NCBI RefSeq assembly: GCF_000002075.1
Contig: NW_004798763.1
Span: forward strand, 22,765-85,105
DNA from: Aplysia californica
Taxonomy: Eukaryota
Direction: 5' to 3'
Length of the DNA stretch: 62,341 nt
Under the pieces are notes generated by a model, which was not told the origin of the DNA, did no database searches, and saw only the letters and a list, made by a program, of their open reading frames with translations. The translations under genes and the position numbers were made by a program. Shown one piece after another: positions 12,944-52,729 of this stretch. The stretch's first letter is position 1, and each line of letters starts with the position of its first letter.

Positions 12944-13361
12944 TTTGATTTTCTGCTTATTATTTTGTTTTTATAAATTCAGTGCAGGGGATTGTAGGGT
13001 ACTGCTGTCAGATCCTATTGTTTTCTTTTTCTTCTGTTATTTCTGTCAATTTATCTTACTTTTTCCATGCACTAATTGATTGTTAATGTGTAGATATCAT
13101 TCTATTTGCTCAAACAAGCAAACTAAATTCAGTTTTCGTAAACAAGATTTTGCAAAGATGAATTTTATTTTTGTTACTTCTCATAGTTGTCCTTTTCCTT
13201 TATCTTTTTTGCTGCAAGAGAAGGACGAGTAACAGCTATGCTGAGGACCTTATTTTTCCATTTTCAAGATCTGTTTTTTTAATAAAGACCTTTTGTGTTT
13301 GTATGGATATAACAAATTTGTGCTCAAATTTGTAATTTTTGTTCTTTTTACTTTATTCCAG

Positions 13362-13415
13362 CAATTTGGGACAATTTTAGATGTGGAGATAATTTTTAAT
13401 GAAAGAGGCTCAAAG
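13362..13415 (+). CDS. Rbfox: RBFOX exon C (QFGTILDVEIIFNERGSK)
   Basis: ttattccag acceptor, 54 nt, AAG|gtgagt donor; matches the Fox-1 RRM. Confidence 0.97.
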
Positions 13416-16400
13416 GTGAGTAAGAATTGCATCAGAATCAGATGTAGTCTGTAAAGCTACATCTTGTGACACTTGATGCTCCTAAAATTCTTGGTGCTCA
13501 ACTCATTTCTGCCATTTGGTCTGTGTCATAAAGTAATCCTCATGGATTTGGTAGGTACAGGCCACTGTTGTCAGTGTAGAAGACTTAGCAAAGAAGAATG
13601 AGGTTCAAATCGCCGTGAGGTGAATATTTCTTATGTTTCTTCTTGAGCATTGCCTCTTAAATCCTTGGAGCAAGGATTTTGCTTCCAAAACAAACTTGTT
13701 ATTGAAAAAAAAGAAATTCATAACAGACCTTTGCCATTGCACTTATGTTCTTCAGGTCTGTGTGAGAACATTTATTCATTTCCCCTGAGGAATGAAGGTT
13801 TGTTGGAATCTTTTCCAAATAATCTCTCTGAAAATGGTCATCTGCAACTGTGGGTTGACTAAATAGGCAGTTGTTCTTTTGTATGAGCTGAATAGTGATT
13901 CGTAGGTCCGAACTCACAAGAGAGGTGAAAAATCTATTTCTGGGGTGAGATATCAGAGATATCATGGCTGTTCAGACTGAGGGAGCATCAAGAATGTATT
14001 TATTGTATATGAACTTTGGTTAAAAAAACAAAAAAAAACCGAGGCAAGTTTGATGGTTAATTTAATGAAACAAGTACACTGCATACATTAAAAAAACACA
14101 TTTTGAACAGACTACTTGCAACTTGAAATATGTAAACAGAAGAGTCTTTCATTCAAAGCAAAAATAGCTTATTTCTGATTGTTTGTATGCAGCTTTACCT
14201 AAGTGTCAAACTTGCCTTCGTCAGTAGAAAGTGAGGCATCCTTTTCTTTCATGTTTGAGACAGAAAACCAGTTACTGTTAATGTGCAAATCTATGTGCTT
14301 GACAAAAAGCTTTTGTTTCAAATGAAATCTTGTGTTAGTGAGTACACACGTGTTGGAAAAAAATGAGAAGAAATTTTCTCTGAGGAGTTTACTAACTCGC
14401 GCATAGTAGTTGTAAAAATGTTTACGTCTGATCAAAAGGAGATATCGATGTCCTTTCAGTTGATGTGTTTTGGTGATAACTCATCTAGTTTTTTTCTCCC
14501 TTTTTGGTATATTGTTGCCTCAGGGGTGCTGAATTCTTGCAAAGCAATAAGTAATTGAAAAGAATGCCTGCTTCAAATTGTTAGTTTGTATTATAAAATA
14601 TTGTTTTTATTGATTTTCCTTTTAAAAATTTAAAGAGAAATCTTAAGAAATAACTGTAATTTAGTATTTTGTGTACTCAGCACCTGGAGTGGCTTCAGTG
14701 GAGACTCAGCATTTCTTTTTTGGTTTGGGAATGTTATCGTTCTGAATTCAGTTGATTGTGATGGCATTCTGTGTTCAGAATACTTTTGGCAAAATCAAAG
14801 TGAACATTTTTCGGAGAGGAATACAAACTTATGAAGTTGTTAAATTTGGAAAAAAAATGAGTCTTTGAATTCACTTTAGGGTCTGGGTGATTAAAGCACA
14901 ATTTAAAATGACCTTGAATGTTTGAATATGGGATATTGTGAAACCGTTTAGGATGCCTGCATGTTTACAAGTCTGATGACATTAGTTTTTGTCAGTGGAG
15001 TGAATAGATGTTGACTTTAATAAATGGATTCTTTTGGTTCTGTGACAAAAGGTGGACGCCATTCTTCCTGTTTTGTGGGAGTAACCTTCTTGGTGTAAAA
15101 AAAAAAATGTATTGCATAGAAAGGGAACTTTGGTTTAAAAGATTAAGAAACCTTGTTTTCGTGTGTGTGTACGTGTGTATACAGAGAACTTATTATATTT
15201 CATGCTTTTGCTTTCTTAGTTTTCCTTCTCAATTTCTGTAGCTTCGATAGAGGTGGGGTGTAGGATTTTCCATTTATAATTTCACTTTGGCATCAGATAC
15301 CTATTATGTTAATTTTTCTTAATTTAATTTTTCATTTTTTGCTGAGTCACTGCAGCACTGAGATACAGGTTATGGACTGGTGAAAACCCATGTGTACAAA
15401 TCACTTTTTTCTTGAAACTGTTGATCAGTGCTGAATGCCTATATGAAAGCGAAGGTGGAGATAATTTTCTTGTGTTGATGTACAGTTTAAAGTAAAATTC
15501 TATGAAAATACTACTTTATACACCAAGTGTCATCCACTGTGGCATGACGAGTTATGAATTTGATACACTTGATGAAGTTCACAGTGTGAACCAAGTCGGG
15601 GTCTAAATATTTCTCGTCTTTCTGTATAGTTAGGTCTGTAGCAGGAATTATGTTACAAAATAACTTATTTTATGTATAGGGGCGGGCGTAAATTTTTCTC
15701 TTCAGGAAATAATAGAATCATCACTGCATAAAGAAGATATGTTCCAGCCAAAAAGTATCAGAATGAACTATTTGATAAGGCACCACTGATCCAGTTTGAA
15801 AACATTTTGAGGCCCTCATATCTGAAGGATATTTTCTACACTATGAGGACAGTCAAGATTGTTGCTTTTACACAAGAGATTATCTTTCAAAGTTTTTTCA
15901 GGGAGATAGATGATCATCTTTTCTTGTCATCATTTTGGCTCAATAATAAATAAATCCCATATTCATTCCTTCCTCATTTTATATAGTGCTGTTGATTGAA
16001 ATTTTGATTGATACTTACTTTAATTATTTAATTTTGTTAATTTACTTATCATTGCATCCTCGTTGAATTCATCCATTCATTCTTCACTCATTTATTCGCC
16101 CAAACACTCAAACAGTCACGTACATACACACACTCACACTCCCAAAACGAAAAGCTAAGACAACTAGATAACAGTAAAACTGCCTGTGTTTGCTCTAAAA
16201 ACCAAGAGTGTTGCATCAGATCTAACACTAGTGTCACGTAATCAGCAGTTGTGATCAGGTTGTGCTGTGTTGTCTCTCTAAGATGGAAAACGAGTGTATG
16301 CTATCACTCAAATGGTATGGATCACCTAACAGGAATGAAAACTCATATTTTTGTGGACTTGTTTCTTTATTTGTTTCTTTCTTTATTTATTTGTTTTTTA

Positions 16401-19400
16401 ATTTATTTATATATATATATTTATTTATTTATTCATTCATTTTTATTTACTTATTCAATTATTTTTTTTAATTCTTAAAAAAAGGGTGTTATGAAACAAG
16501 ATGGAAAGAAAGTCTTTTGGTAGACTTGTGGGATGTACCTGATATATTATGAGGGGCAGGATGTGTCAGGGCAGTGGAATCTCTTTTCTGTGTGAGGGCC
16601 CTACATAGCCTACTTGACTGAATCTATAGCACTTCACATTAATGTTTGAAATGTTTTGAAGAACGAGAAAACAAACTGCCGAGCAAAAAGCAGTAAGGCC
16701 AGGTAATATAATCAATGTGAAAAATGAACGTATTTCCAGCTAGATGTTTTCTGAAAAAAGGGTTTATTCTTTTTTCCTAATGTTTGTCTATTTTTATTTA
16801 GGTATTCATTTATATTTATCCAATTAATTTGTTATTTGTTTATTTATTTGCTTAAACCTATCTGTTTATTTTTTGTGTTTTTATTATTTTTAAAAATAAG
16901 TTTTTATAGTTGTGGCATTTGTCAGTGGGCATTAGATTAACTCGTGTACCTCCCCTACTCTTGGTGTGTTTAGGGGTTGTGCTCTTTTCATTCAGATCTG
17001 TTCTCTGGTATCCTCCTGTCTTCATTTTAATATCTTGATTGTCTTCTCTTTTTTATTGTGTTTGGTTATTGTCTTCATTTTATGAACAGTTTATTTTTCT
17101 TGTGAATAGTAACGTTTCAAATATCTTTGTAGCCTCTGTAGTTCAGCTTTGTCTGTCTGGTTTCGTTGGCCCATTGAATTCCCAGCACTGATTGCTGAAG
17201 GCTGTTTGTGTCCATTTTGCTGTCTGGATCTTTGCTTCTGGCTAGTCATTCACCCAAGGACTATCTTTCTGAAAGGGAACTAAAACAAATTTCAGTTCTG
17301 AAAAACTCTAACCCAGTGATCATAGCAGACTCATTTTTATTTTAATTCATTTAAAATGCTTATTTTTTTTGTTTGGTATTTATCCAATTTTTCCCCTGTC
17401 TTTTGCTTGTATGAGTTGAGGTTTTCACTCGCACCACTCCCAATAACATCTAGAAAATATGACTTGTGTGTTGCTTAATATTGATGTAGCTCTAGACTGC
17501 ATTTATTGACAACATTCAATTTACTAAATCTTGGCCACCCTCTGCAGTGTGCTTCCAAGGAAAAAGGCATTCTTGCATTCTGAAGACTGTCAATTGTAAT
17601 ATTTGCATTTGTGTTTGCTGCTTGACTGTCTCGTTTTGTGAATGAAGTGTTTAGTGTCATACTGTGTATGGAATGACTAAATATGCTGGGCGAATAATTT
17701 TAGCTGTGTGCATCAGATTAATCCGAATGTCAGAAGGTCTAGTTCTTCCGTAGTGATACTAATTACATAACCTTTTGAACTGATGTTTAGTATGAGTGTA
17801 TTTCAGTGCATGGCTGACCCTTGTTACACTGGTCGTTCAGTATATTTTGCAAAACTTTTATGGACACCAACAGTATACCTGTTTGAGCTAGCAAACATTC
17901 AAATTTTGCCGAAATTTCTAAAGGATTTTTGACACAATGAATATTTTCCAACTTAATATAAAACACATTTCGGTTAAGCCAAGGGTTAAATAAATAAAAG
18001 AAGAAAGATTTTATGCTTTAGGTATCAAAAGCGTCGTTTAATGTGTACATTTTTGTCTATTAATCTCAATAGTTTTGGAGGTGTTGCAATACCTGAAAGA
18101 GTGATTAAAATCAACTCTATCAAGTTTCCGAAAAAAAACTTTTCAGTAAAAGGCCACGACAAGTTCAAGCAAAGAGATTCAAATGCGGTTCTTTGAAACA
18201 CTTTTGCATGTTGCGCAAAAACTCTGTGCATGTTGACTTGCAGTTTCAAACAAGAGTGTCGAAGTTGTTTTCGTGACGAGCAAGATCAACATTTTTGTGT
18301 GTGTGCAGGAGTGAGCTGTGATTCTGACATTAAAATAATGTAGGAAATGACCGTTAGTTGTAAACAAATCATTGGTTTATCGTGAATGCAATTTAAACCA
18401 CACTCATGGGTTGTGGTGATCGTTTGACTGGTGGGGAAAATCAGTATGATTTTGGAATGTTAAGGTTAATTTGAAATAAGTAATTTATGCCCATCGTTGG
18501 AGTGAATCTTTTTAGAATTCAAAATATCTGTGGAAAGAATTGAATATTTTATTATCCAGTAAGCCGAATCCAAACTGAATTTCCCTGATCCGTGCGTGTT
18601 GTGTGATCAAACTTTTCCCTGAAACGTGGTACATGTATTTTTTTTAGTAGCCATGATGAGTGAGTGACGGTGGTGTGTACTTATGTGTGTGAAGAATAAA
18701 AACAAAAGGGGGTGGGGGTGGGGAGGGGGGTGGGAGACAAGTTCGGTTGGCTCAAAATAAGATGTAGGGCCTACCTTGTACTAGAGCTGTGTTGATTGAG
18801 GGTGAAGCTGATGATAGGGTGTCATCTTTATCTGGTCAGTGGCATAACAAACAGGGGGTGTTTGTTTTTTGTTTTTTAATCAAAAGGAGAGTCTTTGTTT
18901 TGTCAGTAAAAATCTGTGTAGATGATCCTTGTGTTGTTCCCTTTCCAGGTTTACTTCCCCTTCTGCCCCCAAATAAACTGTAGGAGAAAATTGTGCCCAG
19001 TGGCATGGAAGCATGTCGCTTAGTCCAGTAAGCATGCTGTATAATTTCCCCTGCTCATGTCACGTTTTGAATTTCCTGTTCAAACAGATGTTGACATGCC
19101 CTGCAATGAGAACTAATAACATCTTAACAAAAAACAAAAAAAGAGAGAGAGGCTCTTTCACAAAAACAGCATGTGATACCCACAATTCCAAATTCACACA
19201 TTGCAAACACATGATAGGATTCATGATTTATTTGACTCCTTTTTTTTTTTTCAGAAGTATATAACTATTCACATCCACTTTGTTTAGTTGCTTTGACGTT
19301 CATTGTTTTTTTTTTCAAATTCAGACTGACTGAAGACTGACAATCTTTCTTTTTTTTTTCTAACAATGACGCAGTGATGACATTTCATCTAAACCGTAGA

Positions 19401-19473
19401 TAATACCTTGTTTTTCATATTGTTATTTATGACTGATAATAATGATGATGTTCATGTTTCATTGCACGTTTAA

Positions 19474-19608
19474 TGCATGCCCCTTGTTTTCCTTATGCAT
19501 GCAGGGATTCGGTTTCGTAACTTTCGCAAATAGCGGTGATGCCGACCGAGCACGTGAGAAATTGAACGGCACTGTGGTTGAGGGACGAAAGATTGAGGTG
19601 CCTGCATG
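19474..19608 (+). promoter_or_regulatory. RBFOX binding elements (UGCAUG) flanking the 93-nt exon
   Basis: TGCATG at 19474, at 19496 (abutting the CAG acceptor) and at 19603 (intron +6). Confidence 0.85.
19505..19597 (+). CDS. Rbfox: RBFOX exon D, 93-nt RNP1 exon ([31 protein letters not shown])
   Basis: tgcatgcag acceptor, 93 nt in phase 0/0, weak GAG|gtgcct donor; carries RNP1 GFGFVTF. Confidence 0.97.
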
Positions 19609-21566
19609 CTACTTTACATTTTGTGCTAGCACAACTGAAACCATTGCTAAGTATACTATTGATGTGTTGCAGTATGGAGAAATGCCTGATATTATTTCTT
19701 TTTTCCCTCAATAGAATCACCCATCTTTTCCGTGTCTGTTTGTTTGTTACTTTATGTTTTTGATGGCTACATCAATGTTGTATGAGTCAAACTTCCACCT
19801 TAGATCCCTCTTCTTTTAAGTTTTGTGTCTTGTCTTCAGTGTTAACCGTCCGTCTTTTTGAGTCGTTCAGAGTAAAAGAAGCATCGTAGGGTTCTATCTA
19901 TACATAAAACACACGCAAAAACATTCTTCCTTCTGTGTTTTTTTTTTTTTCTTTACCACATACTTTATTTTTTCCTTCTGGAAAATTCCCACTCGGCCAG
20001 GAAGAGGAGTTCACATGACGAGTAAGGCCATCCTAAGTAGGCCAAGTATGTTTTGTTGTGCATTTTTACATGTGCAATGCTCCCAACTGCCCAGCTATTC
20101 TGATCGCACGCCATCGCAACAATATAAAAGTTTCTTCTTGATTTGTAGATATTTGGTGCATTATCCCTCTTTCGTGTATATGGCATTTCTTTATGCTGTA
20201 ATTTTCATTTCTGGGTCATATTTTGCAAAGTTGTTACTAATTGTTTCTCAAGTTTTGGGAGACTAGTATTTTTTAAAAGAAAACTTTAAAGAGAAAAAAA
20301 TTGGGGAAGAAAAGAAAAACATTTTGGTCCACGTTAGTTTTTACGTTTTCCAAAAGTATAGATTTTTTCTGTTTTGTGGGTGGGCTATCTTAACTTTTTC
20401 TAGTGTGGGAAGGAATAGAATTGATAAATATTCATATATGCATAGAGATATTGTTCTAATCTCCACATATTTAAGGCCATAATAACCTTTTTCCTTTCCT
20501 TTTAAAGAAGCTCAAACTTTGGACATTTGGTTTCACTGAAGGTGTTTGGTTTTGTTGAGTGAGGGACTGCCATTTTGAGGCAGGTTGATGGGATGGAGAG
20601 CATTTCCTGAATACAATTCATGGCTGTGAAGTGCTTGTGGAGGGAAAAAAATGCTTTGCACATGGAAAATAAACCGCGATAAACAAAAATGATGTTTTGT
20701 GTATGCCTGCTGGCCCTGTGATTACAAAAGTTTTCATTTTTGGGGGTTTGTGTTAAAACAAAAGTTTGTTGGGTTTGGGAAATTTTGTGAATATTTCTGA
20801 TATTGCTGCTATTGAAAACAAAAATATTTAGAGAGGAAGCAGAATATTTCACTTTATCTCCTTACTATGGAGGAAAATGCATTGTTTTTCATCCTCTTGT
20901 GGCCTTGAACTGTATTAGTGGAGTTTAGAACTTTATGTTTTAATTGGATTTGTAGCTCAATGGCCAGATGTGATATATTTGATTTAATTCTAAAGATGAA
21001 AAATCCATTGCCTTATACCAGAATTGTATTATTGGTATTTTTATCTATTTTTCACTATTATTAAGATTTAAATTTAAATTATTTATCAGAAGACAACTGT
21101 AAATTTAATGCTGTAATGCAAAATGATATTGGTTAAATATCACCTTTAGCTTGTTATGACTTTTAATGTGAAACGTGAAAAGAAGAGAAAATATGTTGGA
21201 CTTACCATGTGCTGGGTTGGTGCTAGAAGTGAAAAATGTTGAATTGAAATATGGTTGGACAATTGAGTTAACGCTGCCTCTGAAGTATGTCATAGCAAGC
21301 TAAAACTGGCCTTAGGTTTTCCTTTGATTTGTCTTGTAAGATTATTTAACAATGTCATGAGACCTTATCTTGAGAGACTCTCCAGACATTTCTAAATTTC
21401 CATATCCTAGTTTGTTTAACTGACAAAAAAAAAAAAGACAAAAAAAGAGATAGAGCAAACAATTTTGCATATATTCAGTGGTCTTGGTTTGTCTCTCAAG
21501 AGAAGAACTTGTGTGTTTGCATTTTGTCTCGCATTTGTTTTGACCCAAACCATGATTCTGTGCTAG

Positions 21567-21627
21567 GTTAACAATGCTACTGCACGGGTCATGACCAAAA
21601 AGGTGACCGCACCCACACTGTCTACCG
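21567..21627 (+). CDS. Rbfox: RBFOX exon E (VNNATARVMTKKVTAPTLST)
   Basis: tgctag acceptor, 61 nt, G|gtaagg donor in phase 1; VNNATARVM ends the RRM. Confidence 0.96.
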
Positions 21628-24010
21628 GTAAGGAATCAGTCTTCCCTATGAATACTCTATTTCCCATTTTCTTTCCTTTGTTCATTGCAAGCATGCATTC
21701 ACGTCCTTTGTTTTTTTGTTGTCTTTTTTTGTTGTTTTTTTGTTTGTTTTATCTTTACTTTTATAATGAGGTACATAGAAGTAGTAGATGATTATGATGA
21801 AGCAACGATTTTCTGCAACAGAAAAGACTTTTTCCTTTCTATTCTGAATAAGTTTTCCACTGTATGTCTTTAGTGTTCTTCAGTAGGCCTCCATTTTGTA
21901 GAAGATTGTAGAGTTGGATTTTGATAGCCTCAGAACTTTCCCCCCCATTGGCTGCTATTCTTTTTTTATAAGCGTCATAGGTGCCTTTTACAGTAGGCCT
22001 CTATTTCTTTCTGATCTTCTGCATGGACTTTGAAGAAACATGCTTACTGTATTTCGGATCCTCTTTTCTTCTATTCACACAAAGATATCCCTGAAAGATG
22101 TGATATGAGTTTTATCACCCTCTATGTTTTCCAAGAAAGAAAAAACAGAGAGAGAAAGATTGACTTTGCTCTTTCTTCCTTATATCATCCTTTGATCAAA
22201 TTGTTTCATTCAAATTACTGTCATAGCTATAGTTTGTTCACTTTTGTCTTTCCATATTTAAAAATAATTTAATTCAATTATTTATTTACCAATGCTCTTG
22301 TAACTTTGCATGACACTACTGTAGGCTGGTGACCAAACAAAAATATATTTTAGAAAATACTTCGATCCAGTAACAAAAAAATGATTTTATTTGGGTGTAG
22401 GCCCTATGTTAAACACCACCCTTTTGGGTGTATACACAGGATCACTGAAATAAAGGATTTACAGTAACCAAGGTTACAAATTGCTCAATTTGAGGCAGTG
22501 ACATCCCACTGCCCCTTTATTACAGTGCAGTCACATAGTCTTCCCTCCCTCTCCCCTCAAAAAAAGGCCTCACAAAAACCTCAAAAAGTCACCACCTGAG
22601 TCTGGAAAAGTACTCAACTGTCTATGAAAGTGTGGTGTTCATGTAAATAAGTCAACTTTTGATGTTTTAGATGTAGGCCTATGCTCTAAATCTCCTATAA
22701 TGTTTAAAAATCGATTTGGGGCTAATATCATAGAAAATGTGCTGGAACTTTTATTTTACAGTGGCTTTCATTCATGGACTTTAAGATTCTATTGGTCATT
22801 CTACTTTAAGGCTCTGGCGCAAAGACCTCAGGAAATTAATCAGAGAGATATTTGTTTTTATTCCTGTTTGAACCACAGACAGGTGAAAGTGAACAATCTA
22901 TAGTTGTAGTAAGTCACCTCTCAATCAGTCGTGGAGCAGTGTGTGACTATGAGAATGAATAAAGAGCCTCTTTGCCGATGATGATTGGATAACATTACAA
23001 TCTTGAATGTTTACATAAAACTAAAGTTGAGGGGTCAGAAGGCTAATTTATTATTTTCTTGTAAAGGATATGTATTTAACTTTAAGGAAGGTGAAATGGT
23101 CAGCGTGATCCTGTCTTCCTCTTTGTTCTTTTGCATATTATCAGTGTCATTTGCATTTTGATTTTTGGTCAATTTGATAGCTTGGCATATTGTGTATATT
23201 TCCCCTTCTGGAGATGTTTGAAAAGAGTTAAATTAACACAAGAACCCTATCCCATCAAAGCTTTGCAGGAGTATGGATTTTTCTTTTACACCTCAAAATT
23301 TCCATGTGAAAGCATGTATACGGCTTTCCTTCTTCCATCCTTCTCAAATTTACTGACAGATTTTTTTTCGTTGTTGTTCACCTTCCATTCCTGATTCTTG
23401 TTCTCTGGAATGAAATCAATACGTTCCCTAGAACGAATGGGAATGTTTTCATCTTTGAAAGCTTTTGCTTCTGTGCATCTTTATGAACGTTTTTTAAATT
23501 TAATTTGTTTCGTTTTTGAGAATAGCTTTGAAAGTTTTGTTTTTACAAAATGAGTTTTCCCACCCATGAATATATGATCTGCATAGTTCAATTTGCATTG
23601 GAGATTCTGGACTAGCCATTGGCTATTTGTGAATAATGTTTGTTGACAGTTTTGCTGGATGTTGGTGAAATAACAAAAGAATTTGTAGGTGTAGTTGGAA
23701 TGTTACGAATAAGCCTGTGATGGCCTGATGTCATTGAATGCTCTTTCCCATGTGGATGAATGATAATTTGAATGGTATGAAAATACTAGAATCACTAAGT
23801 AGCATTTGGATCGGTGCAGTCCTGTTCACATTACATTGCATAGCCCTGGCTGAGACTTAGAGACCAAACCAGGGCTGTAGCCTTTGTTGGACATGCCTGT
23901 ATGCTTTGCAGTCTGTTTTGCCAGCTATGTTATAATATTTATACTATAATTTTGAGTATGTATGCGTGTCAGTAACGGAGGAGTGAAATATTTGATGATC
24001 CTCTTTTTAG

Positions 24011-24182
24011 ATTCGGTAGCTGCTGCAGCTTTACGCGGAGTTGCCTTGACCCGGGGTCGTACTGCTGCAGCTGTGGCAGCCAGAGGGCTCGGTGGTGTGT
24101 ACACAGCTGCAGCTGCAGCTGCTGCAGGTCTGAGGCACCCAACGCCAATTGCTGCTCCGCCCACTGCAATCCCCTATGCTGC
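24011..24182 (+). CDS. Rbfox: RBFOX exon F (DSVAAAALRGVALTRGR...PTAIPYA; Ala-rich C-terminal domain)
   Basis: tttttag acceptor in phase 1, 172 nt, GC|gtaagt donor; the RG..L.RGR motif matches the Fox-1 C-terminal domain. Confidence 0.92.
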
Positions 24183-24850
24183 GTAAGTTCTAGTGCTTTA
24201 CTTATTACTTTTGTTGGTGTAAGACTATAAGTTCTGATGCTGTACTTTTGACTTTAATAAGCTGTATGTTCCTATGCTTTTTTAACTTTTATAAGTGTAT
24301 TTGAGTACTTATATGCTGACTTTTGTTAGTGTAAGTTTGATGCCAAAGTTTGATGCAAAATTTTATGCTCTACTTTTATAAGTACGGAGCTGATTCTGAA
24401 GAAACAACTTGTGCTGAATAGGGGTGATAGAGAAGTGTAAAGAAAAGAAAAAAGCTTTGTCTCCTTTAAGTACAGAAAACATGGTGTCTTTGTCATTCAT
24501 TTTATATTATTGTGATTAAGTATGGATAATAGGTAGGCTTCTCAGAGGGTATTCTGTAAAACACTCTTATGTGCCTTCCGTAATAATGAAGGTACAGTTT
24601 AGCACTAGTGGCACAAACTCAGTAAACTCGAAATCATGGATAGCTTGCACAATTTGCGATTCCTTTCTGGAATCTCTATAATTTTTCGTGATCAGTTAAT
24701 CTGAATTATTATGGATACGTCAAACAGGTTTGTCAATCCCCGTAATGTTTGAGTTATCTGTGCCAGGTTGTAAGTGTTTTTCATAATTGAACCAAAAGTA
24801 AATCTATAGGAATTTACATCAGAGGTCTCTTTTTCTCTTTATGTTCCCAG

Positions 24851-24899
24851 GAGTGTTTATCAAGATCCTTTCTTGACCTATGATCCAGCCCGCTATCAG
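24851..24899 (+). CDS. Rbfox: RBFOX exon G (ASVYQDPFLTYDPARYQ; equivalent to the vertebrate VVYQD exon)
   Basis: ttcccag acceptor in phase 2, 49 nt, CAG|gtaaat donor; VYQD motif. Confidence 0.9.
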
Positions 24900-25199
24900 G
24901 TAAATATGGCTACTTGATGAAGCTTATTTGTCACTAGCTGTTTAGGTTTTGTTAACATGAATAAGTCTTGGGGTTAAAATGTTATGTTTAAATGTCAAAA
25001 TAGTGTCCTCTTTTTATATGTAGCTTTTTATTTTTATTGTTCATTAAATTTTAAAACATTTTTACTTAGGTTCTTTATAAAATTTTAAATGGTATTTGGG
25101 TTCATTATTCTTGCAAATCGAAATTAAAAAAAAAAAATTGCGAATTGAACAAGTTTAAAATGTGGCAGCCTAATTGTTGTACTTCTGTGCCCGTAACAG

Positions 25200-25318
25200 T
25201 TAGTCACAAGTCAGCCATATCCTGCTGCAGCGGCCGCAGCCAGCTACCCTACAGGAGCTGCCCGATATGCTATCCCAGCTGCAGCTGTAGCTACTCCAGT
25301 CACCTACACAGCTGCCGG
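25200..25318 (+). CDS. Rbfox: RBFOX exon H (LVTSQPYPAAAAAASYPTGAARYAIPAAAVATPVTYTAA)
   Basis: taacag acceptor in phase 0, 119 nt, GG|gtaagt donor; Tyr/Ala/Pro-rich, contains the RYA motif. Confidence 0.88.
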
Positions 25319-26027
25319 GTAAGTGGGCTGCTTGCTTTTGGGTTTTTTTGGGTTTGGGATTTTTTTTTTTTTTTCGTTTTTAATAGGGAACCCATCAAAG
25401 CCTTAATTATGTTCGAAGGTTTGTTGAACCCATACATCACATACTGAGAACCTGTTTCTCTACCAGATGTTATTTTCCTATAAAGTAATTTTGAAAATAT
25501 AATAATATGATGACCCAGTTTATGTTTAGAACGGTAAGTGAATCTGATATTTCAGTTGTTTGACTAGTAAAAAGGTCCATATTTTCCGCATTTTGTTCAT
25601 ATTATTTTCAAGAGTTTACATTTATCTGACTTTTGTTTCTTCTTTTCCATAACAACAAACATTTAAAAAATATATAAGTCAGTCAGACTTGACTGACTCT
25701 CAAAGTATTATGGACACACATTCCAATAGCCACGGCTCCAGGATCTGGTTTGGGTAGAGAATGGGAGTAGCCAGAGAGTCAAATGAATTTCTCTAATGGC
25801 AAGAATAACTTGAAACGCTGGAGCTTTCGGTCCTCAATGATTATGTACCAACAAGCAATGGCCTTGAAAGTATGTAGAATGGAGTCTCTCTAACACTGCT
25901 TTGTTGAAAGGGATAGAAAGACTGAATGATTCATGTTCTTGAAGAGTTCTCCATATATAATTTTATGAAACGTGTCATAAATGAGACAATTGCCCCTAGC
26001 TATACCTAAGACGTTTTATAATTTTAA

Positions 26028-27006
26028 CTCATTCGCTACGTATTATTTTCGGCTTGTGGACGAATTCTTTTCGGGAGGGCGAAAAGAGATGATGACTAGT
26101 GCGCAGTTCACAGGTCTTTGGGGTCATAAATTCAAATAAATATCAACATATTATATACCAACATTTTCAGTATGGTTTGTAGAATACATCTGCATTATTT
26201 ATTTGCGTATTTTTCAACTTTGGTTCCTGTAAGAGGCGATTATGCAACACAATTGTGATTGGATGCGGATAAAATTGGAAAATAAAAAATTTATAATCTC
26301 AGGTGAAACTAAAAAAATATGTTTGCACCTAGTCAAATGATACTTCAAAATAACCATAACTGTATATAGAACAGGAAAATATTGAAAAATGTGCAGTTAT
26401 TTACATACATTCCATAATATTTGTACATTTGGATCGTAACATCCGATATTGAAAAAAAATATTTTTTAAAAATAATTTTGAAAAAAGGATCACAAACAGA
26501 GAAAAATACGCGTATCTTATATGGAATTATTCAGAATTGCATTTGGAATAAACCTATACATGTCTTGAGTGGTACTTTTTGATTAATTTCACCCAAAAGT
26601 AGTGATTTTGGGGAGAAAAAAATATTTTGACTATTTAGATCTAGGCCTAGATCTAGCACTCAAAAATATTACAGTGCACCGGCAATTTGCGTCCAATAGT
26701 ATCAATATTATAAAGAAGAGTCATACATTTCTTTATTGAGCAAAATAATGATACATTTTGTTGTGTAAAAGTACTAACACTGGTGTCTGGGCTATAATTT
26801 GGGCTTCGCGATAAAACAAAGTCGAATAAACTACGAAATCGTGTTTCAAAACTGAATCAAAACTTCCGATTTTCGGTGGAAACGCTTGACCCGGAAGTCA
26901 ACATTATATTATGACCTTTATTTTAACATGGATATGTGGATTGGAATAGAAACCAAGCTAAAATTGAACGTCGGTTCTCGAGCCGCCGGGGGGCATAGCG
27001 AATGAG
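26028..27006. mobile_element. piggyBac-like non-autonomous element in an RBFOX intron
   Basis: TTAA|CTCATTCGCTA ... TAGCGAATGAG|TTAA: perfect 11-bp TIR and TTAA target duplication; CpG-richer than its flanks. Confidence 0.8.
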
Positions 27007-27238
27007 TTAAGAGTCGTTCTTTTGAAGTGGACAGACTGACTCAGAGAAATAGAGGCAAGCAATTTTGGGAACTTGAATCTTATTGTGTAAAATCTTGCAT
27101 CAAATCTGGTTGGAATGGTCGATATGCATCTACCACTTATGACATTGCATGAATTGAGAGCTTTCTAGACCTATAGCTAGTGTAGAAAGATACAGTAATT
27201 CTTCTTGTATGCCATGTATTTTATTTTCTCTCATTCAG

Positions 27239-27279
27239 CTCCGGTCATAGCTCTGATCTAACAACCTTGTTAAGAATGT
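27239..27279 (+). CDS. Candidate alternative 41-nt frameshifting RBFOX exon (A53-like nuclear/cytoplasmic switch)
   Basis: Strong acceptor attttattttctctcattcag; TGT|gtatga donor; open in the incoming frame; the shifted frame stays open through exons I and J to TAA 28298-28300. Confidence 0.55.
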
Positions 27280-27369
27280 GTATGAGACGAAGAATGAAAA
27301 TTTGCAGTTTGCTGACTATGAAATTAGATGTTGTATGTTCTCTTGCTTAACATTCTGTTCACGTTTCAG

Positions 27370-27436
27370 CTATGGCCGAGAATATGCTGCTGAACCTTAT
27401 ATTGGACACAGTATTGGGCCAGTTGCTGGCTATGGG
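27370..27436 (+). CDS. Rbfox: RBFOX exon I (GYGREYAAEPYIGHSIGPVAGYG)
   Basis: tttcag acceptor in phase 2, 67 nt, GGG|gtaagt donor; protostome-type YGREYA..PY motif. Confidence 0.93.
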
Positions 27437-28218
27437 GTAAGTAATTTTTTTGGTGTTTTTCACAATTCATTGAAAATAACATTGATCTTTTTTTAATTGG
27501 AAGAACTAATTATGTAACTTGTTTCTTTTTTTCTCTCTCGAAGTGTGTTTTTATTTATTTGGGTTTTTTAATTTGCCAAATTATAAATCTGTCATGAAAA
27601 TTGGAAGAGATAATCGCGACCCCAGTGCTTTCTTGTCATCTCAACAAAAAAAAAAAGTGAAAATGTGACATCTTCTTAAGCTCGGTAAGATCTTCTTAAG
27701 CTAACTCTTTGTTATGAACTGTTTTCACTGTTACTAAAAATGGAGATACAAGAAGAAAACACTGGGGTCGTGTAATATTGTGGATTTGTCATTATGAAAA
27801 ACTGAAGGAAATTCTACCACTCCCATTGGTTGTCTTTTAGAATACACCTTTCTTATATTATTTCCTGTCCTTTTCTGAAAATGTCTACAATTTCATAGCA
27901 CTTTGAGTAATTCTTTTGATCTTTAGTAATTTTACATCTGACTGAAATAAAATCTTTCACTAACTTTTACTCTAAAGATTCCCGTGGTGTTTTTACAAGG
28001 AGAACAATCAAGTTTTGGATTTTTTAAACACTACTCTGACAAAAACGCAGTTTAATTTTTATTTCATACCCATGTAATTGGTATGTAGTGATTTTTAGAC
28101 TTGCAGATTGGTGATTGTCTCCTTCTAAATAATGATCTTTACAATTTTTCTTGAATAATAAATTGAAATTTTTGAGTTTGATGTGCAAATATGATTTTTT
28201 TTCTTCTGTTCTTCTCAG

Positions 28219-28263
28219 GCAACCGTGTATCGAGGAGGGTACCAAAGGTTTGCACCTTATTAG
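28219..28263 (+). CDS. Rbfox: RBFOX terminal coding exon J (ATVYRGGYQRFAPY*; PY-type NLS)
   Basis: Long pyrimidine tract and ctcag acceptor; YRGGYxRFAPY followed by a stop is the canonical Fox-1 C-terminus. Confidence 0.96.
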   Translation, partial: ATVYRGGYQRFAPY

Positions 28264-34200: not shown

Positions 34201-36665
34201 CATTTGTAGTTTTTCAATAGTCTTCTCATTGTTAGGATAGTAAATGTCATTAACCTTTTGGCAATGATGAACAGACACACTAATTGAGACTTGAGGTCAA
34301 TGAATTTGACTCCAAACTGCTGGTCTCTCAGAACGGTCTACATTAGAAGACAGGTCTGATTTGAAATAATCAAATTTAAATACAGGAAATACACATGATG
34401 ATTTTGATAAGTTATAATAATTTTTTAAAAACCTGTTTGGTCTATTTGACGACCTTCATGGATCCCAACTTCAACAGATAGTCCTTTTCTCACTTTAGGT
34501 TCACCGGTTCACTTTTCCATTACAAACGTGGCGACATTGTTTTTACCATCAGGAGGTGATGATATTCCTTGCTTTGTCATTATGTCCTGTGCACATCATA
34601 ATTCAATAGGTGTTTTACTTAACATTGCCTGTTCATCTAAAGAAAAGACAAATACTAGCTTTTTTCTGTTTTATACATATTTATATACTTACCAGACATA
34701 TTTATTAATGTTTGTTTTACTCTTCCTTCTCAGTCTGTGTTGAGCCCAGAGGAATAAATCTCTATAAGAGTCAAGTCTTTACAACTTTGTTGTAACAATG
34801 ACAGTCATCTGAATCCATGTATCTGATCTTAAAAGTTGTTGTGGGAAAACTTGCCGACCTCATAAAGATTTGAATCTTTGGTGCTTAACACAACTCAAAC
34901 AGTATTTTATTTATGTGAACTAAACTTTAATGTCCATTTTTTTCCCCCAAGTCTTTTATGAATTGTATACAGTGATAGTTCTTTCTGAAATTGTTAGCTG
35001 TGACATCATTGTTTGATGTATCAAGAAAAGGGAAAAAATCAAATAAATGTCTTCCATGATATTTTGTTACAGTTGCTATGATTATGATTATATTTAATTA
35101 TATTATAAAGATAAAATTCAAAATTTAAAAGATTGTTCTCTGACTTTGTTGGATTTTGTTATCTTGGTGTGAGGTGATTTACTTCAGATTGCTCCTGTGT
35201 TAATCAACTTTCTCTGTCAGGTACTTCTCGTATCTCTTCCTAAGTTGCATGTTCTGATACATTTGTCCTCGTGAACAAGTAAAATATGGACGAACATTGT
35301 ATGTACCTTGAAGATGTTGGCGTGTCCACCCACCCTTCAATTTTCATCTTCAGTCTCCCTGAAACTGGACAATGTCCATATGCATGTCGTGCTTTTCTTC
35401 ATGTTGCTTTTGGGATTGTTTGACATGAATGGCACTAAAATTGCTGTAGTCTAGCGCATGAACTGAAGAGGACACTGAACATTGTGAATACTTGACAATG
35501 CATTTCTCACTTAAAAAACATGAGTCAACATTTACGAAATTGGAAGGAGGGGGAGGGAGAAGAGTTGTTTTTATTCTCTGGAATATTGATAATGCGTAGG
35601 GATTTGAAACCTAAGCTTTCTCGTGGCATTGTCAAGTCTTCAATAAGTTTGTCTCTCTTTGTAGTTGCCCCACACAAATGACTAACCTTTTTTTTTCGCA
35701 CTGGGATTGTTTTCAAAGATGAGAGAGTAATGTAGAAATAAAAACTTGAAGGGAAGTTTGTCTGCTGTGTTTGTTTAACTTATCGGCTCATGCAAACTTT
35801 TTCTTGATTTTTTGCTTTGTTTTATTGCACAGTGCGATGCATCATTGTTTGTGGCAACATTCTTTTTAGCATGAACGCTTGTTTTTGCTGTGGACTACAG
35901 CTTAACTTTTTTTGCAACTCTCCTGGTCTTAACTCATGGTCACGTTTATATATATATGAGAATGCTTAGACAATGAGCAGGTAGTCTTGGAAAGCATGCT
36001 AATAAAAACTTGAGAAGGCAAATGGTTTTTGCCCATGGTTTCTGTTGAGTTGTATTGTTTGAGATGTTTTAACTGTAAATACTATGCATTTCCTCTTAAC
36101 AATTTCCTCTTATGTTTTGACCACACTGCATTGTATCATCATTATCGTGTAGTAGAAATGATAGAACAGTAGCTACTCTTGTACATGATTATTATTTTCA
36201 CTTCATATGGTTTTGTTGAATGATTAGATGCGTTGCATGTTTGGACTCATTTATATACTGTACTTTTTCAATAACGTTGTTCCTTACTCTATATCATGTG
36301 GGAATGTTCAGTGTGTTAGACATTCTGTTTCTTTTCATTGGCTGTTGTCATTGTGGATTTTTTTTTTTTAACATTCTGATGTATGTAATTTTGGAAACTC
36401 ACTTTGCTTTCTTTATGTTTCCTTTCCCTTCCTAAATGCTTGTATAATATATTCTACCCAAGTTGATTAAAAAAAGAAAAAAAAAGTAAAGAGAGCATGT
36501 CAGGGCCTATTTCTTTCTTAAATTTCAGTTGTCTTTCTCAGCTTCTTTGTATGTAAACAACATATTCTTTGATTCACGTGGCTATTTTAGATTCTCAAGT
36601 TTTGAGTTTTGGCGCTTGTAAGAACAAAACTAAAAAATAAATAAACGATTTCTCCTTATACTTCA
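28264..36665 (+). other. Probable long RBFOX 3'UTR with alternative poly(A) sites
   Basis: No further exons; continuous U-rich sense-strand composition; AATAAA near 34753, 35042, 35737 and 36001, and a tandem pair at 36636-36645. The distal end is inferred. Confidence 0.5.
32500..33050 (+). repeat. Old interspersed repeat inside the putative 3'UTR
   Basis: Inverted homology to about 49590-50130 (agctagaaaatggctgccaaa / tttggcggccattttctagct) and direct homology to about 62020-62110. Confidence 0.65.
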
Positions 36666-36690
36666 TGCTATATTTTATTTTTATTTTGGC
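36636..36690 (+). terminator. Distal polyadenylation signal
   Basis: Overlapping AATAAATAAA, a CA about 20 nt downstream, then a U-rich tract tattttatttttattttgg. Confidence 0.5.
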
Positions 36691-37019
36691 GAGACCCGCT
36701 TCTGAATGCTAGTGTCTCATGACATTAAGGTTCACACCACAGATACGGTCATCTTTTAGCCTCCTCAATCAAGTATAAACTTTTTTCAGATCTGTGAACA
36801 TCACTATTCACCGACATGTAAAGATCCTGAATTCTTGACGAAACACTCTACTGCATTTTCATAATCAGGTCCCCATGTTGGCATTCTTTATTGTGCATTG
36901 CATGCAAGATTCATATCTTGATGAGTCTAAATACTTTCAACAGTGCATGAGATTTTTTGCCCACACCCCTGCATGACCACAATTTGATGATGGGATATAG
37001 AGTGTTTGTCTATATTATA

Positions 37020-37051
<32 letters not shown>

Positions 37052-37276
37052 CTCTCATGTTTACTGCCTGCGGTTACTAACATCTACTGCCCAGTCAGAT
37101 GCATGACTATTTCTTTTTGTTTTAGTTGGTGAGCCTTCGTTTCTTTTTTGGTTTTCTTCTGCCCCTATTTTATTGTTCGCATTGAGAATGCGTGTGTGCT
37201 GTGTACTAATTTGGCCACTGTTTTGAGTCTTTTGTCATGATTCGAAACAGTGTTCTGTGAGGTATCATAGAAGATT

Positions 37277-44795: not shown

Positions 44796-46435
44796 CTGTG
44801 CACCATATAGTGAGTGATAGGTGTGTAGGTTTGAGAAGGATTTTCCTAAGTAAAATGAAATAATAAGTAAGCACTGTCCTGCATATATATTTTGAAAGGT
44901 AATAAAATGTAGCATCGAAATGTGTAAACAAATATCTGATTAGGCAAAGTACATAATTGATACTTGTCAGAGAATGTATACATCACAAGGGAGCTAATAA
45001 AAAGACAGACCAAGTTTCCTACTTTGAATAAATAACGAAATTTAAGTTTCAAAATAACATTCTTGTGCTCATAAAATGAATGTTACATTCAATTGAAAAA
45101 TTCTACCATATTTTATTTTATAAATTTTTTAACATCACTGTGAGAATGCCAAAAGTTGTAATGAATCACAATTTGCCAGAGTGGCATTTGTTATTGTCCA
45201 AGTCTAGATTTAGATTTAGACCTACATCATTATCCTCTTGATTTTCACTTCTCTTGGCTTACTTTCCCTTTAATTTCCCAGCACATCCACTCACTCCTTT
45301 ATCTTCAACTGGCCTCTTTGCTGTCACTGTAGATTTAGATCTACAAATATTGTCTTTTTTCACACCTCTCACTCTCAATTCAATCATCACCCGAATCAGA
45401 ATCTAAAGATAAGGATTCTAGGTCATTATCACCTCTGTTCTCAAGTTTACTAAAGAAAAATTCTCTGGTCTGTTTTACACATTATATGCCCATGGGGTTA
45501 TTAGCTACCAGCCCAGAAACATAACTAGAACTAGTAATGGGTGTGGCCATCTTTCATGTTTTGGTTTCACAAACAGACCACACAAAATACTGAAATAATA
45601 TCAACTTTTCCCCCACTTACGTATAGACACTATATTTCGTTGCAGGAAGTTTCTACTTTAGAGATTTGTTTATATCAAAACTTACAATAATGGATCAAGT
45701 ATGTTTATGAACTAGATTTTCTAAATATATAAAGTTGGTGTATAGCCGGTGCCTATGTATTGGTAATGAGTGAAAATGGTGCGGTCGCACTACCAATATA
45801 TCGGTAATGGGAAGAGAATGAGTTAAACATTTCATCATATGACATAGGTGTGCATTTACGAGAAGCTCTTTTTACACAGCCTGCACTGGTACTTGCAATT
45901 TTATCAACAACAAAAAATTGTCGCATTGCTTTCAACGAATTCTCAGACTCAACAGAAAGCAAAGCCACACCTGGTGACTTTGTTGAATCAAGTTTCACTA
46001 TAAAAGTAACTTGAAACACTTTGAAATTTAAGAGCAGTACTTCATTTGTGCAAAATAAGGCAAAAAGAATGTTCACAAAGTCAAAAAACGTTACTGCCTC
46101 TACAGCATAGAGAAGATGAAATCTTTGTGTGGAATGATAGTAACAGTACCTGTTCATGGATTTTTCTTAGCTCCTGGATGAACCATGTAGAACAAATAAA
46201 TGGCGTCATCACACAAAATATGTATCTAGCTTAAGATTATTTATTGTTTATATTGTTGCTCATTTATATTACGAATGTGATAGTAAGCCTGCATGTGTAT
46301 GCATGTTTGTGTGAGTGTGTTTGCGTGTGCGTGTGCGTTTGTGTGTGTGCATGTTGTGAAACATCAAACCAATGTGCTGTAACGTAACAAATACGCCACA
46401 GCCCCACCTTTCGGTCAAGCCAAGGCCAAACTCAC

Positions 46436-51049: not shown

Positions 51050-52729
51050 AAATGCTAAGCCTAATTAAACTCGTCCAAAAAAGTCAAGGACAGCTTGTGT
51101 TTTCACCTGTCAAATTTAAACTTCAATATCTCACAAACTCGTTAAGATCAGTCAACCAAACTTGGCACACGCACTGTCGACTAGACACAGTTTGCATGTA
51201 CAGCAAATTTGCCCGCACCAGCTTCACATTGACGGCGCAGGGCATTCTGAAACACAGTCGAAAATCATGAAAAATGGGCTAAATTTCTCTGACTCAGCAA
51301 CATTGACTGTTAGCTAAAACTAAGCTTGGCACGTGCTAAACAGATGTCTCAGCTGTGATTCTTGCTCCCTTACAACCCTTTATAAGGCAGCGATTTTCAG
51401 CCACGTTTCATTACAACACAATGGTCCAACGACGCTTGCTGCCCGACGTCGACAGAGAACGAGTCCTTGCCTGGCTCCAAGATGGCTCCACGTTCTCAAT
51501 TGTTGCACATCGACTTGGGGTGTCCCCATCAGTCATACGGAGGCTGCAAGAACGATGACGAGCGACCGGAAGGGTCCAGGACAGGCCTCAACCAGGGTGC
51601 CATGTTTGACCAACGACAGCATCGACCGGTTCATCGTCGGACAGGGCGTGACGTCATGAACCACTACTGCAAATGGCACGAAGGACCAACTATGGGTGAC
51701 AGCCAATGTCCACGAGAGCGAGGAGATGGTAAGGAACTGTAATCGTAGAGCCAAGTTCGCTTCTCGTGTCCCTGCCAGGCGCCCAAGGCACACGCTGCCC
51801 CACACAGCAGCTGGTCGGGCGTGGTCTGCTTGCCATTCACAGCGGACCCAATGTCAGTGGGACCAGGTAGTCTTCTCGGACGAATCCAGATTCAACCTGC
51901 TGCACCCAGATAGGCGAGCCCACGTCTGGAGGCGCCGAGGAGAGATGTTCCACCCTGAGTGCATCAAGCAGGTGGCGCCCTACGGCAGAGGGCCCGTTTT
52001 GGTGTGGGGAGGCTTTTCAGCTCACCACAAGACCCCCTGTACCATATACAGGGCAATTTGACCGCGGCAAGGTACAGGAAGGAAATCCTGCGTCCCCCTT
52101 GCTGTTTCTCTCTTGCAACAGATTGGACCCCAGGCTATACTGCAGGACGACAACGCCACGCCACATCGCGCACGCATCGTTGGGGATTTCCTGCAGCAGC
52201 GAGCTTTCACCCGCATGGACTGACCAGCTTGTGGTCCGGATTTGAACCCAATAGAGAACATTTGGGATCCCATTGACCGGTGGATAAAAGACAACCACCC
52301 TCCTGCACAAAACCTTAAGCAACTCTTGGCTACCTCGTCCAGGAGGGGCAGAACCTGTACTGCAACAAGTCCTCCGAAGGCATGTCCTGTCCATACGTCG
52401 ACGCTGTGCCGAGTGTTTGATAAAACAGGGTGGCTACACCCACTATTGACCATGTTCATGAAGAACTATGGCTGTTCAGACTTTTGAAATCCGACCAGTG
52501 TGACTTAAACTCATTTTACATGACCTTCTCATTTTTGTTGAAATTTGAAATTGTACACACTTAATCTAAAGAGTCGAAAGCAACATTTTGGAAAAAATGA
52601 ATAAATTTGGTTAATAAACTGTTCTTCAGTTATCTTTCTTTGAATTTTTGTTCCTTGACTTTTTTGTGCGAATTTCCATCCTTCTTTTGGAACGCCCTCT
52701 CTGTGCAAATAATATTTTGTAGTACACTG
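51050..52729 (+). mobile_element. Decayed Tc1/mariner DNA transposon
   Basis: Right end ...GTACACTG|TA at 52729; AAAAAAGTCAAGGA near 51077 is inverted near 52651-52664. The left boundary is uncertain. Confidence 0.8.
51421..52445 (+). pseudogene. Tc1-family DD34E transposase, inactivated
   Basis: N-terminal HTH (VAHRLGVSPSVIRRL), then WDQVVFSDESRF, VLVWGGFS, LQDDNATPHRA and PDLNPIENIW with 34 residues between D and E; several frameshifts and in-frame stops. Confidence 0.93.

What the first reader, a model, noticed from the sequence alone, without database searches (positions are those of the whole stretch)
19474..19608. RBFOX's own UGCAUG motif sits on both splice sites of its RNP1 exon (negative autoregulation)
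Seen: TGCATG at -31 (19474), at -9 to -4 next to the CAG (19496) and at +6 of a weak gtgcct donor (19603). The exon is 93 nt in phase 0/0, so skipping joins ...ERGSK to VNNATAR... in frame and deletes most of RNP1. Established: RBFOX proteins bind UGCAUG, and mammalian Rbfox genes repress their homologous 93-nt RRM exon to make an RNA-binding-defective, dominant-negative isoform. Inference: the feedback loop exists in this invertebrate with the same exon size, which points to an ancient bilaterian origin.
Basis: partly seen in the sequence, partly recalled or inferred. Interest (0 to 1): 0.8.

Follow-up and report, generated by a model that had tools for sequence, protein, structure and literature searches.

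The report
RBFOX self-repressed RRM exon in Aplysia
The sea-hare gene for the splicing factor RBFOX carries its own binding motifs at both ends of an exon it needs to bind RNA. This self-limiting loop is already known from mammals and reported for flies, and the motif layout turns out to be shared almost letter for letter by molluscs, a brachiopod, an annelid and insects.

Summary
Observation confirmed. The window holds the single Aplysia californica RBFOX gene (XP_005112984.1 maps exactly). Its 93-nt, phase 0/0 exon (19505-19597) has TGCATG at -31, -9 and +6. Two further RBFOX motifs (GCACG) lie at -41 and inside the exon; the -41 and -31 motifs bracket the likely branch point. The layout is conserved: a flank-blind scan found GCATG at the acceptor in 17/30 and at the donor in 21/30 non-redundant loci, against 0/29 and 0/29 at neighbouring exons. 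Named brachiopod, chiton and annelid genomes share it. The donor motif sits at +2, +4, +6 or +9, which points to selection on the motif. Exon-skipped proteins are annotated in molluscs, a brachiopod, arthropods and vertebrates, but none in Aplysia, and the RNA runs available could not test the junction. The loop is known: shown in mammals, the equivalent alternative exon is reported for Drosophila, and autoregulation for C. elegans asd-1. Verdict: new member of a known kind. The addition is the cross-phylum, base-level conservation of the element. Non-bilaterian outgroups are untested. The scan had not noted this element on other DNA.

The parts
4445..28263 (+). Coding span of the RBFOX gene of Aplysia californica (11 mapped coding exons; first 12 aa of isoform X2 not mapped)
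   Evidence: XP_005112984.1 (P0215) matches the window without mismatch, exon by exon; single copy in G000
13362..13415 (+). 54-nt upstream RRM exon ending in ERGSK (K is the first RNP1 residue), phase 0
19463..19468 (+).
   Evidence: conserved in Lingula, Liolophura, Paralvinella; GCACG as RBFOX motif: 10.1101/840272
19469..19474 (+). Candidate branch point TTTAAT (branch A inferred at 19473, -32)
   Evidence: Matches the yUnAy consensus (inference); the TAATGCATG block recurs in mollusc, brachiopod, annelid and insect-type loci
19474..19479 (+). TGCATG at -31, abutting the candidate branch point
19496..19501 (+). TGCATG at -9..-4, between the pyrimidine tract and the CAG acceptor
   Evidence: same register in 23 of 40 non-redundant loci
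19505..19597 (+). 93-nt cassette exon: RNP1 and second half of the RRM, phase 0/0
   Evidence: 28/31 identical to RBFOX1/2 in the PDB; RRM_1 E 1.5e-8
19550..19554 (+). Exonic GCACG formed by the Ala-Arg codons of R-A-R
   Evidence: Present in 25/29 loci with flank motifs against 3/10 without (not corrected for relatedness)
19603..19608 (+). TGCATG at +6 of a weak donor (gtgcct)
   Evidence: at +2, +4, +6 or +9 in other lineages
19620..19651 (+). Conserved downstream intronic block (TAGCAC ... TGCTAAG), function unknown
   Evidence: Aligned with Lingula, Liolophura, Paralvinella and in part insect-type loci; no folding signal
21567..21627 (+). Downstream exon starting VNNATAR, phase 0 start

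Best explanation
This is the Aplysia copy of the Fox-family autoregulatory RRM cassette exon. SHOWN here: exon, frame, motif positions, their conservation across phyla, and annotated skipped isoforms in relatives. INFERRED: when nuclear RBFOX is abundant it binds GCAYG sites that bracket the branch point (-41, -31), sit between the pyrimidine tract and the AG (-9), lie in the exon (+46) and overlap or abut the weak donor (+6). This hinders SF1/U2AF and U1 binding, so the exon is skipped in frame (13415>21567). The product lacks RNP1, cannot bind RNA, and either competes through its intact C-terminus or is degraded. The result is negative feedback on active RBFOX. The arrangement was present in the protostome ancestor and, with the vertebrate data, most simply in the last common bilaterian ancestor.
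For: Identity and single copy. Flank-blind DNA scan: GCATG at the acceptor 17/30, branch zone 15/30, donor 21/30, all three 13/30; controls at neighbouring exons 0/29 acceptors and 0/29 donors. Lingula, Liolophura and Paralvinella carry GCACG, branch-point TGCATG, -9 TGCATG and GTGCATG donor. The donor motif shifts register (+2, +4, +6, +9) but is kept. 111 skip-type proteins (GSK joined to VNNAT) from bivalves, gastropods (Littorina, Pomacea, Babylonia), Lingula, chelicerates, insects, hagfish and fish. Literature: three upstream and one downstream UGCAUG at Fox-2 exon 6 with skipping on overexpression, and a -34 element blocking SF1 at calcitonin exon 4 (PMC2777236).
Against: No skip isoform among Aplysia RefSeq X1-X3 or among the best 120 hits of the junction search, although the Aplysia flanks match the query at 26/28 and 12/14. 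RNA reads gave no exon coverage, so skipping is untested. Downstream UGCAUG usually enhances inclusion (PMC2777236). 11 of 40 loci lack the flank motifs. No binding or dosage experiment was possible.
Confidence: 0.8

Rival explanations
1. Mixed-sign switch: the upstream sites repress, but the site at +6, moved off the GT dinucleotide in Aplysia, acts as a downstream enhancer. The exon would then respond to RBFOX dose in two phases or even positively, as proposed for chicken Rbfox3.
For: General position rule that downstream sites activate (PMC2777236). Chicken Rbfox3 has three downstream UGCAUG and is predicted to be activated (PMC3575530); rbfox3-type loci here have GCATG only at +77..+282.
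Against: In 14 loci the motif overlaps the donor itself (GTGCATG) and in 11 it is at +4, where a bound protein would block U1 (inference). Three upstream sites sit on core signals.
Confidence: 0.1
2. The element works, but in Aplysia the outcome is intron retention or an unstable transcript or protein rather than a dominant-negative skipped protein.
For: No annotated Aplysia skip isoform. One contig of run X12 runs unspliced from 19441 to 21541 at depth 52 against 7-18 around it. A lophotrochozoan-type contig (L032) keeps the upstream intron while lacking the downstream one. Chicken Rbfox3-d31 is rapidly degraded.
Against: X12 is only guessed to be RNA and a filter drops conserved spliced records, so the contig proves nothing. 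Skip isoforms are annotated in three other gastropods and many bivalves.
Confidence: 0.07
3. The motifs are inherited remnants or plain splice-signal sequence, and the exon is constitutive in Aplysia.
For: All three Aplysia RefSeq isoforms include the exon. The -9 motif overlaps an ordinary TGCAG-type acceptor.
Against: 0/29 neighbouring acceptors and 0/29 donors carry the motif. Aplysia kept a perfect TGCATG after it moved to +6, and the rest of the intron is not conserved.
Confidence: 0.03

Closest known systems
Mammalian Rbfox2 exon 6 and the equivalent Rbfox1/Rbfox3 93-nt RRM cassette exons (Baraniak 2006; Damianov and Black 2010, as cited in PMC2777236, PMC3126832, PMC3575530)
   Same: Same 93-nt exon, same phases and boundaries, 28/31 residues identical, several upstream UGCAUG and one downstream, in-frame loss of RNP1.
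   Different: Single-copy gene, so only self-regulation and no cross-regulation among paralogues. Donor motif at +6 rather than overlapping the GT as in most lophotrochozoan loci and a fish-type locus (L024). One upstream site is GCACG. Function not tested.
Drosophila Rbfox1/A2bp1 equivalent alternative exon (PMC3126832, introduction)
   Same: Invertebrate with the same alternative exon. A dipteran-type locus (L004, assignment from memory of the protein) also has TGCATG at +6 and one at -24.
   Different: L004 lacks the -9 site; Aplysia keeps the fuller set.
Chicken Rbfox3 93-nt RRM exon (PMC3575530)
   Same: Same cassette and same 31-aa deletion product.
   Different: Motifs lie in the downstream intron, the exon is predicted to be activated, and the skipped protein is degraded. 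Rbfox3-type loci here lack splice-site motifs.
Calcitonin/CGRP exon 4 repression by Fox proteins (PMC2777236)
   Same: A -34 upstream element that blocks SF1 at the branch point plus a +45 exonic element; comparable to the -31 and +46 sites here.
   Different: A target gene, not the regulator itself; the likeness is positional only.

Membership tests
RBFOX/Fox-1 family | Single highly conserved RRM of the Fox-1 type | tested here: met
   28/31 identity of the exon to RBFOX1/2 chains 2cq3, 4zka, 2err; RefSeq name
RBFOX/Fox-1 family | C-terminal RF(A/T)PY nuclear localisation signal | tested here: met
   Last coding exon 28220-28263 reads ...GGYQRFAPY-stop
RBFOX/Fox-1 family | Pfam Fox-1_C (PF12414) domain | tested here: inconclusive
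   No hit in G000, but the search is exon by exon and no control rang; only vertebrate hits carry it, so it is not diagnostic for invertebrates
Fox autoregulatory RRM cassette exon | 93-nt phase 0/0 exon from GFGFVTF to RKIE whose skip is in frame | tested here: met
Fox autoregulatory RRM cassette exon | Conserved (U)GCAUG elements upstream and downstream of the exon | tested here: met
Fox autoregulatory RRM cassette exon | Exon is skipped in transcripts of this species | tested here: inconclusive
   3'-end-type libraries with zero exon depth; the junction spans 8.2 kb, over the 6,000-letter limit; not annotated in Aplysia, annotated in relatives
Fox autoregulatory RRM cassette exon | Skipping depends on RBFOX binding and dose | not testable with these tools
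   Needs a minigene, knockdown or CLIP
Fox autoregulatory RRM cassette exon | Skipped protein acts as a dominant negative | not testable with these tools
   Needs a functional assay

The most novel reading that the evidence does not exclude
A five-site RBFOX element (GCACG and TGCATG around the branch point, TGCATG at -9, an exonic GCACG written into synonymous codons, and a donor-side TGCATG that slides between +2 and +9), plus a downstream block, has been kept almost base for base across molluscs, brachiopods, annelids and arthropods. That would make it one of very few intronic splicing elements alignable across animal phyla, and its full layout may not have been described. It would block all three core splice signals at once and was lost independently in several lineages and in rbfox3-type paralogues.
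Probability: 0.45. Interest if true: 0.5.

Novelty: new member of a known kind. Interest (0 to 1): 0.35.

Why it matters
It extends a known feedback loop of a major neuronal and muscle splicing regulator to Lophotrochozoa and to a classic neurobiology model with a single RBFOX gene, where self-regulation can be studied without paralogues. The cross-phylum alignment names the sites to mutate and suggests a simple mechanism (blocking branch point, acceptor and donor). Natural variants of the donor register (+2, +4, +6, +9) are a ready-made series for asking when a downstream RBFOX site represses rather than enhances. The loop's existence and great age are not a surprise.

Tried and rejected
Reads: runs X23 and X24 pile up on one strand just 5' of genomic A-runs and have no depth on any exon, which fits 3'-tag libraries (the tool also drops human-like reads without notice), so nothing can be said about skipping. 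The tool did not refuse the stretch. The skip junction spans 8.2 kb, over the 6,000-letter limit, and a joined (spliced) query was left out. The large protein search was wasted by my error: I sent residues 22-52 of P0063 (intron read-through) instead of the exon at 53-83. Damianov and Black 2010, and the ids I tried for Baraniak 2006 and Conboy 2017, are not held; I rely on papers that cite the first two. RNA structure in either flank: rejected, z-scores -0.6 to +1.3. Four loci (L007, L009, L035, L070) encode an exon identical to the human-type RBFOX1/2 peptide and may be human; they were left out, their flanks unread. Some short ORFs are of the same type and were not pursued.

Full report
Observation. 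The exon between the CAG acceptor and the gtgcct donor is 19505-19597, 93 nt, phase 0/0. The flanking exons are 13362-13415 (ends ERGSK) and 21567-21627 (starts VNNATAR), so skipping keeps the frame. It removes seven of the eight RNP1 residues and positions 40-70 of the 70-position Pfam RRM model. The gene holds 14 plus-strand TGCATG in 23.8 kb; three within 60 flank positions has a Poisson chance of about 7e-6 (window chosen after the fact), and none of the other ten exons has GCATG near a splice site.

Identity. The exon is 28/31 identical to RBFOX1/2 in the PDB and occurs once in the genome. A word search with a related transcript returned RBFOX of Aplysia californica, XP_005112984.1, which maps onto the window without mismatch over 11 exons. 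All three Aplysia RefSeq isoforms include the exon.

Extra anatomy. Two more RBFOX motifs are present. TGCACG at 19463 and the -31 TGCATG bracket TTTAAT, a good branch-point candidate (branch A at -32 is my inference). A GCACG lies inside the exon at 19550. GCACG is a recognised variant primary motif (10.1101/840272). A further conserved block lies at 19620-19651; it shows no folding signal.

Conservation. I scanned metagenome contigs with a degenerate pattern for the exon's 3' end only, which is blind to the flanks. After leaving out four possibly human loci and merging near-identical flanks, 30 genomic loci remained. GCATG lay at the acceptor in 17 (always in the -9 register), in the branch zone in 15, and at the donor in 21; 13 had all three and 8 had none. 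At the neighbouring exons of the same loci the counts were 0/29 acceptors and 0/29 donors. Most of these loci have no species name. Named genomes fill this in: the brachiopod Lingula, the chiton Liolophura and the annelid Paralvinella carry GCACG, TTTAATGCATG, the -9 TGCATG, a GTGCATG donor and the downstream block. The donor-side TGCATG starts at +2 in 14 loci, +4 in 11 (arthropod-type exons), +6 in 2 (plus Aplysia) and +9 in 1. A motif that changes register but stays intact is better explained by selection on the motif than by a frozen sequence (inference). The exonic GCACG occurs in 25/29 loci with flank motifs and 3/10 without (Fisher p 0.002, not corrected for relatedness), and GCA is used at that alanine in 29/39 loci against 32/94 at other alanines. 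Some lineages lack the motifs: a fluke (Opisthorchis), several unnamed loci, and rbfox3-type vertebrate loci, which have GCATG only at +77 to +282, as described for chicken Rbfox3 (PMC3575530).

Is the exon skipped? A search aimed at the skip junction returned 111 proteins in which GSK joins VNNAT or VNHAT: bivalves, the gastropods Littorina, Pomacea and Babylonia, Lingula, spiders, scorpion, horseshoe crabs, ticks, many insects, hagfish and fish. Most are RefSeq 'isoform X' models, which from my own knowledge rest on RNA-seq introns; some are plain gene predictions and may be errors (Opisthorchis has no motifs). No Aplysia skip form was found. The one read call (18301-24300) was uninformative: the two raw RNA runs behave as 3'-tag libraries and have no depth on exons, the junction is longer than the 6,000-letter limit, and a joined query was left out. 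So skipping in Aplysia is inferred from relatives, not shown.

Mechanism. Most likely (0.8), RBFOX binds its own pre-mRNA at sites that cover the branch point, the acceptor and the weak donor, the exon is skipped, and the RNP1-less product lowers RBFOX activity. Precedents: Fox-2 exon 6 has three upstream and one downstream UGCAUG and is skipped on overexpression; at calcitonin exon 4 a -34 element blocks SF1 and a +45 exonic element blocks U2AF65 (PMC2777236). Rivals are a mixed-sign switch with the +6 site as enhancer (0.1), retention or degradation rather than a dominant-negative product (0.07), and a constitutive exon (0.03).

What is known. The mammalian loop is established. The equivalent alternative exon is stated to exist in the Drosophila homologue (PMC3126832, citing Damianov and Black 2010, which is not held), and similar autoregulation is mentioned for C. 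elegans asd-1. The ancient origin is therefore anticipated in print. In nine literature searches I found no description of the lophotrochozoan case or of the base-level cross-phylum layout, but the library lacks the key paper. Whether the element predates Bilateria remains open: my one large protein search was sent with the wrong residues and was wasted.

Verdict. Real, well conserved and very probably functional; a new member of a known kind. Interest 0.35. The most novel reading not excluded is that the full five-site element, alignable across phyla, is undescribed (probability 0.45, interest 0.5).

Noticed in passing
window 21100-21420 (also 20100-20300, 18900-19100): One-strand read piles in both raw RNA runs (depth about 70, 20 and 15-19) end just before genomic A-runs. 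Most likely internal oligo-dT priming on unspliced introns around the cassette; an intronic poly(A) site is not excluded.
   Followed up: partly
window 19441-21541: One contig of run X12 runs unspliced across the cassette exon and its downstream intron at depth 52, against 7-18 around it; possible intron retention, but the run type is a guess.
   Followed up: no
window 19620-19651: Downstream block shared with brachiopod, chiton and annelid, and in part with insect-type loci; contains TGCT (MBNL-like) and, in relatives, ACTAA (QKI-like) words; the TAGCA/TGCTA arms do not fold better than shuffles.
   Followed up: partly
window 8824-8880: A 57-nt in-frame alternative exon: present in RefSeq X1 and X2, absent from X3.
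   Followed up: partly
window 35246-37105 and 46290-46353: Clusters of plus-strand TGCATG downstream of the stop codon (28263); possible RBFOX sites in a long 3' UTR or in another gene.
   Followed up: no
Between 27438 and 28219 I found one AG..41 nt..GT candidate (27504-27544) that looks intronic and is in no RefSeq isoform; 27146-27370 was not scanned.
   Followed up: partly
L010, L037, L074: RBFOX loci that appear to have lost the intron after the 93-nt exon (L010 both flanking introns), which would abolish the cassette; no GCATG in the 60 nt upstream.
   Followed up: no
P0239 (Elysia crispata): Gene model with a 7-residue insert before the RNP1 exon; alternative acceptor or annotation error.
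   Followed up: no
window 51391-52071: GC-rich stretch whose translation has VVFSDESRF, typical of a Tc1/mariner transposase remnant (from memory).
   Followed up: no
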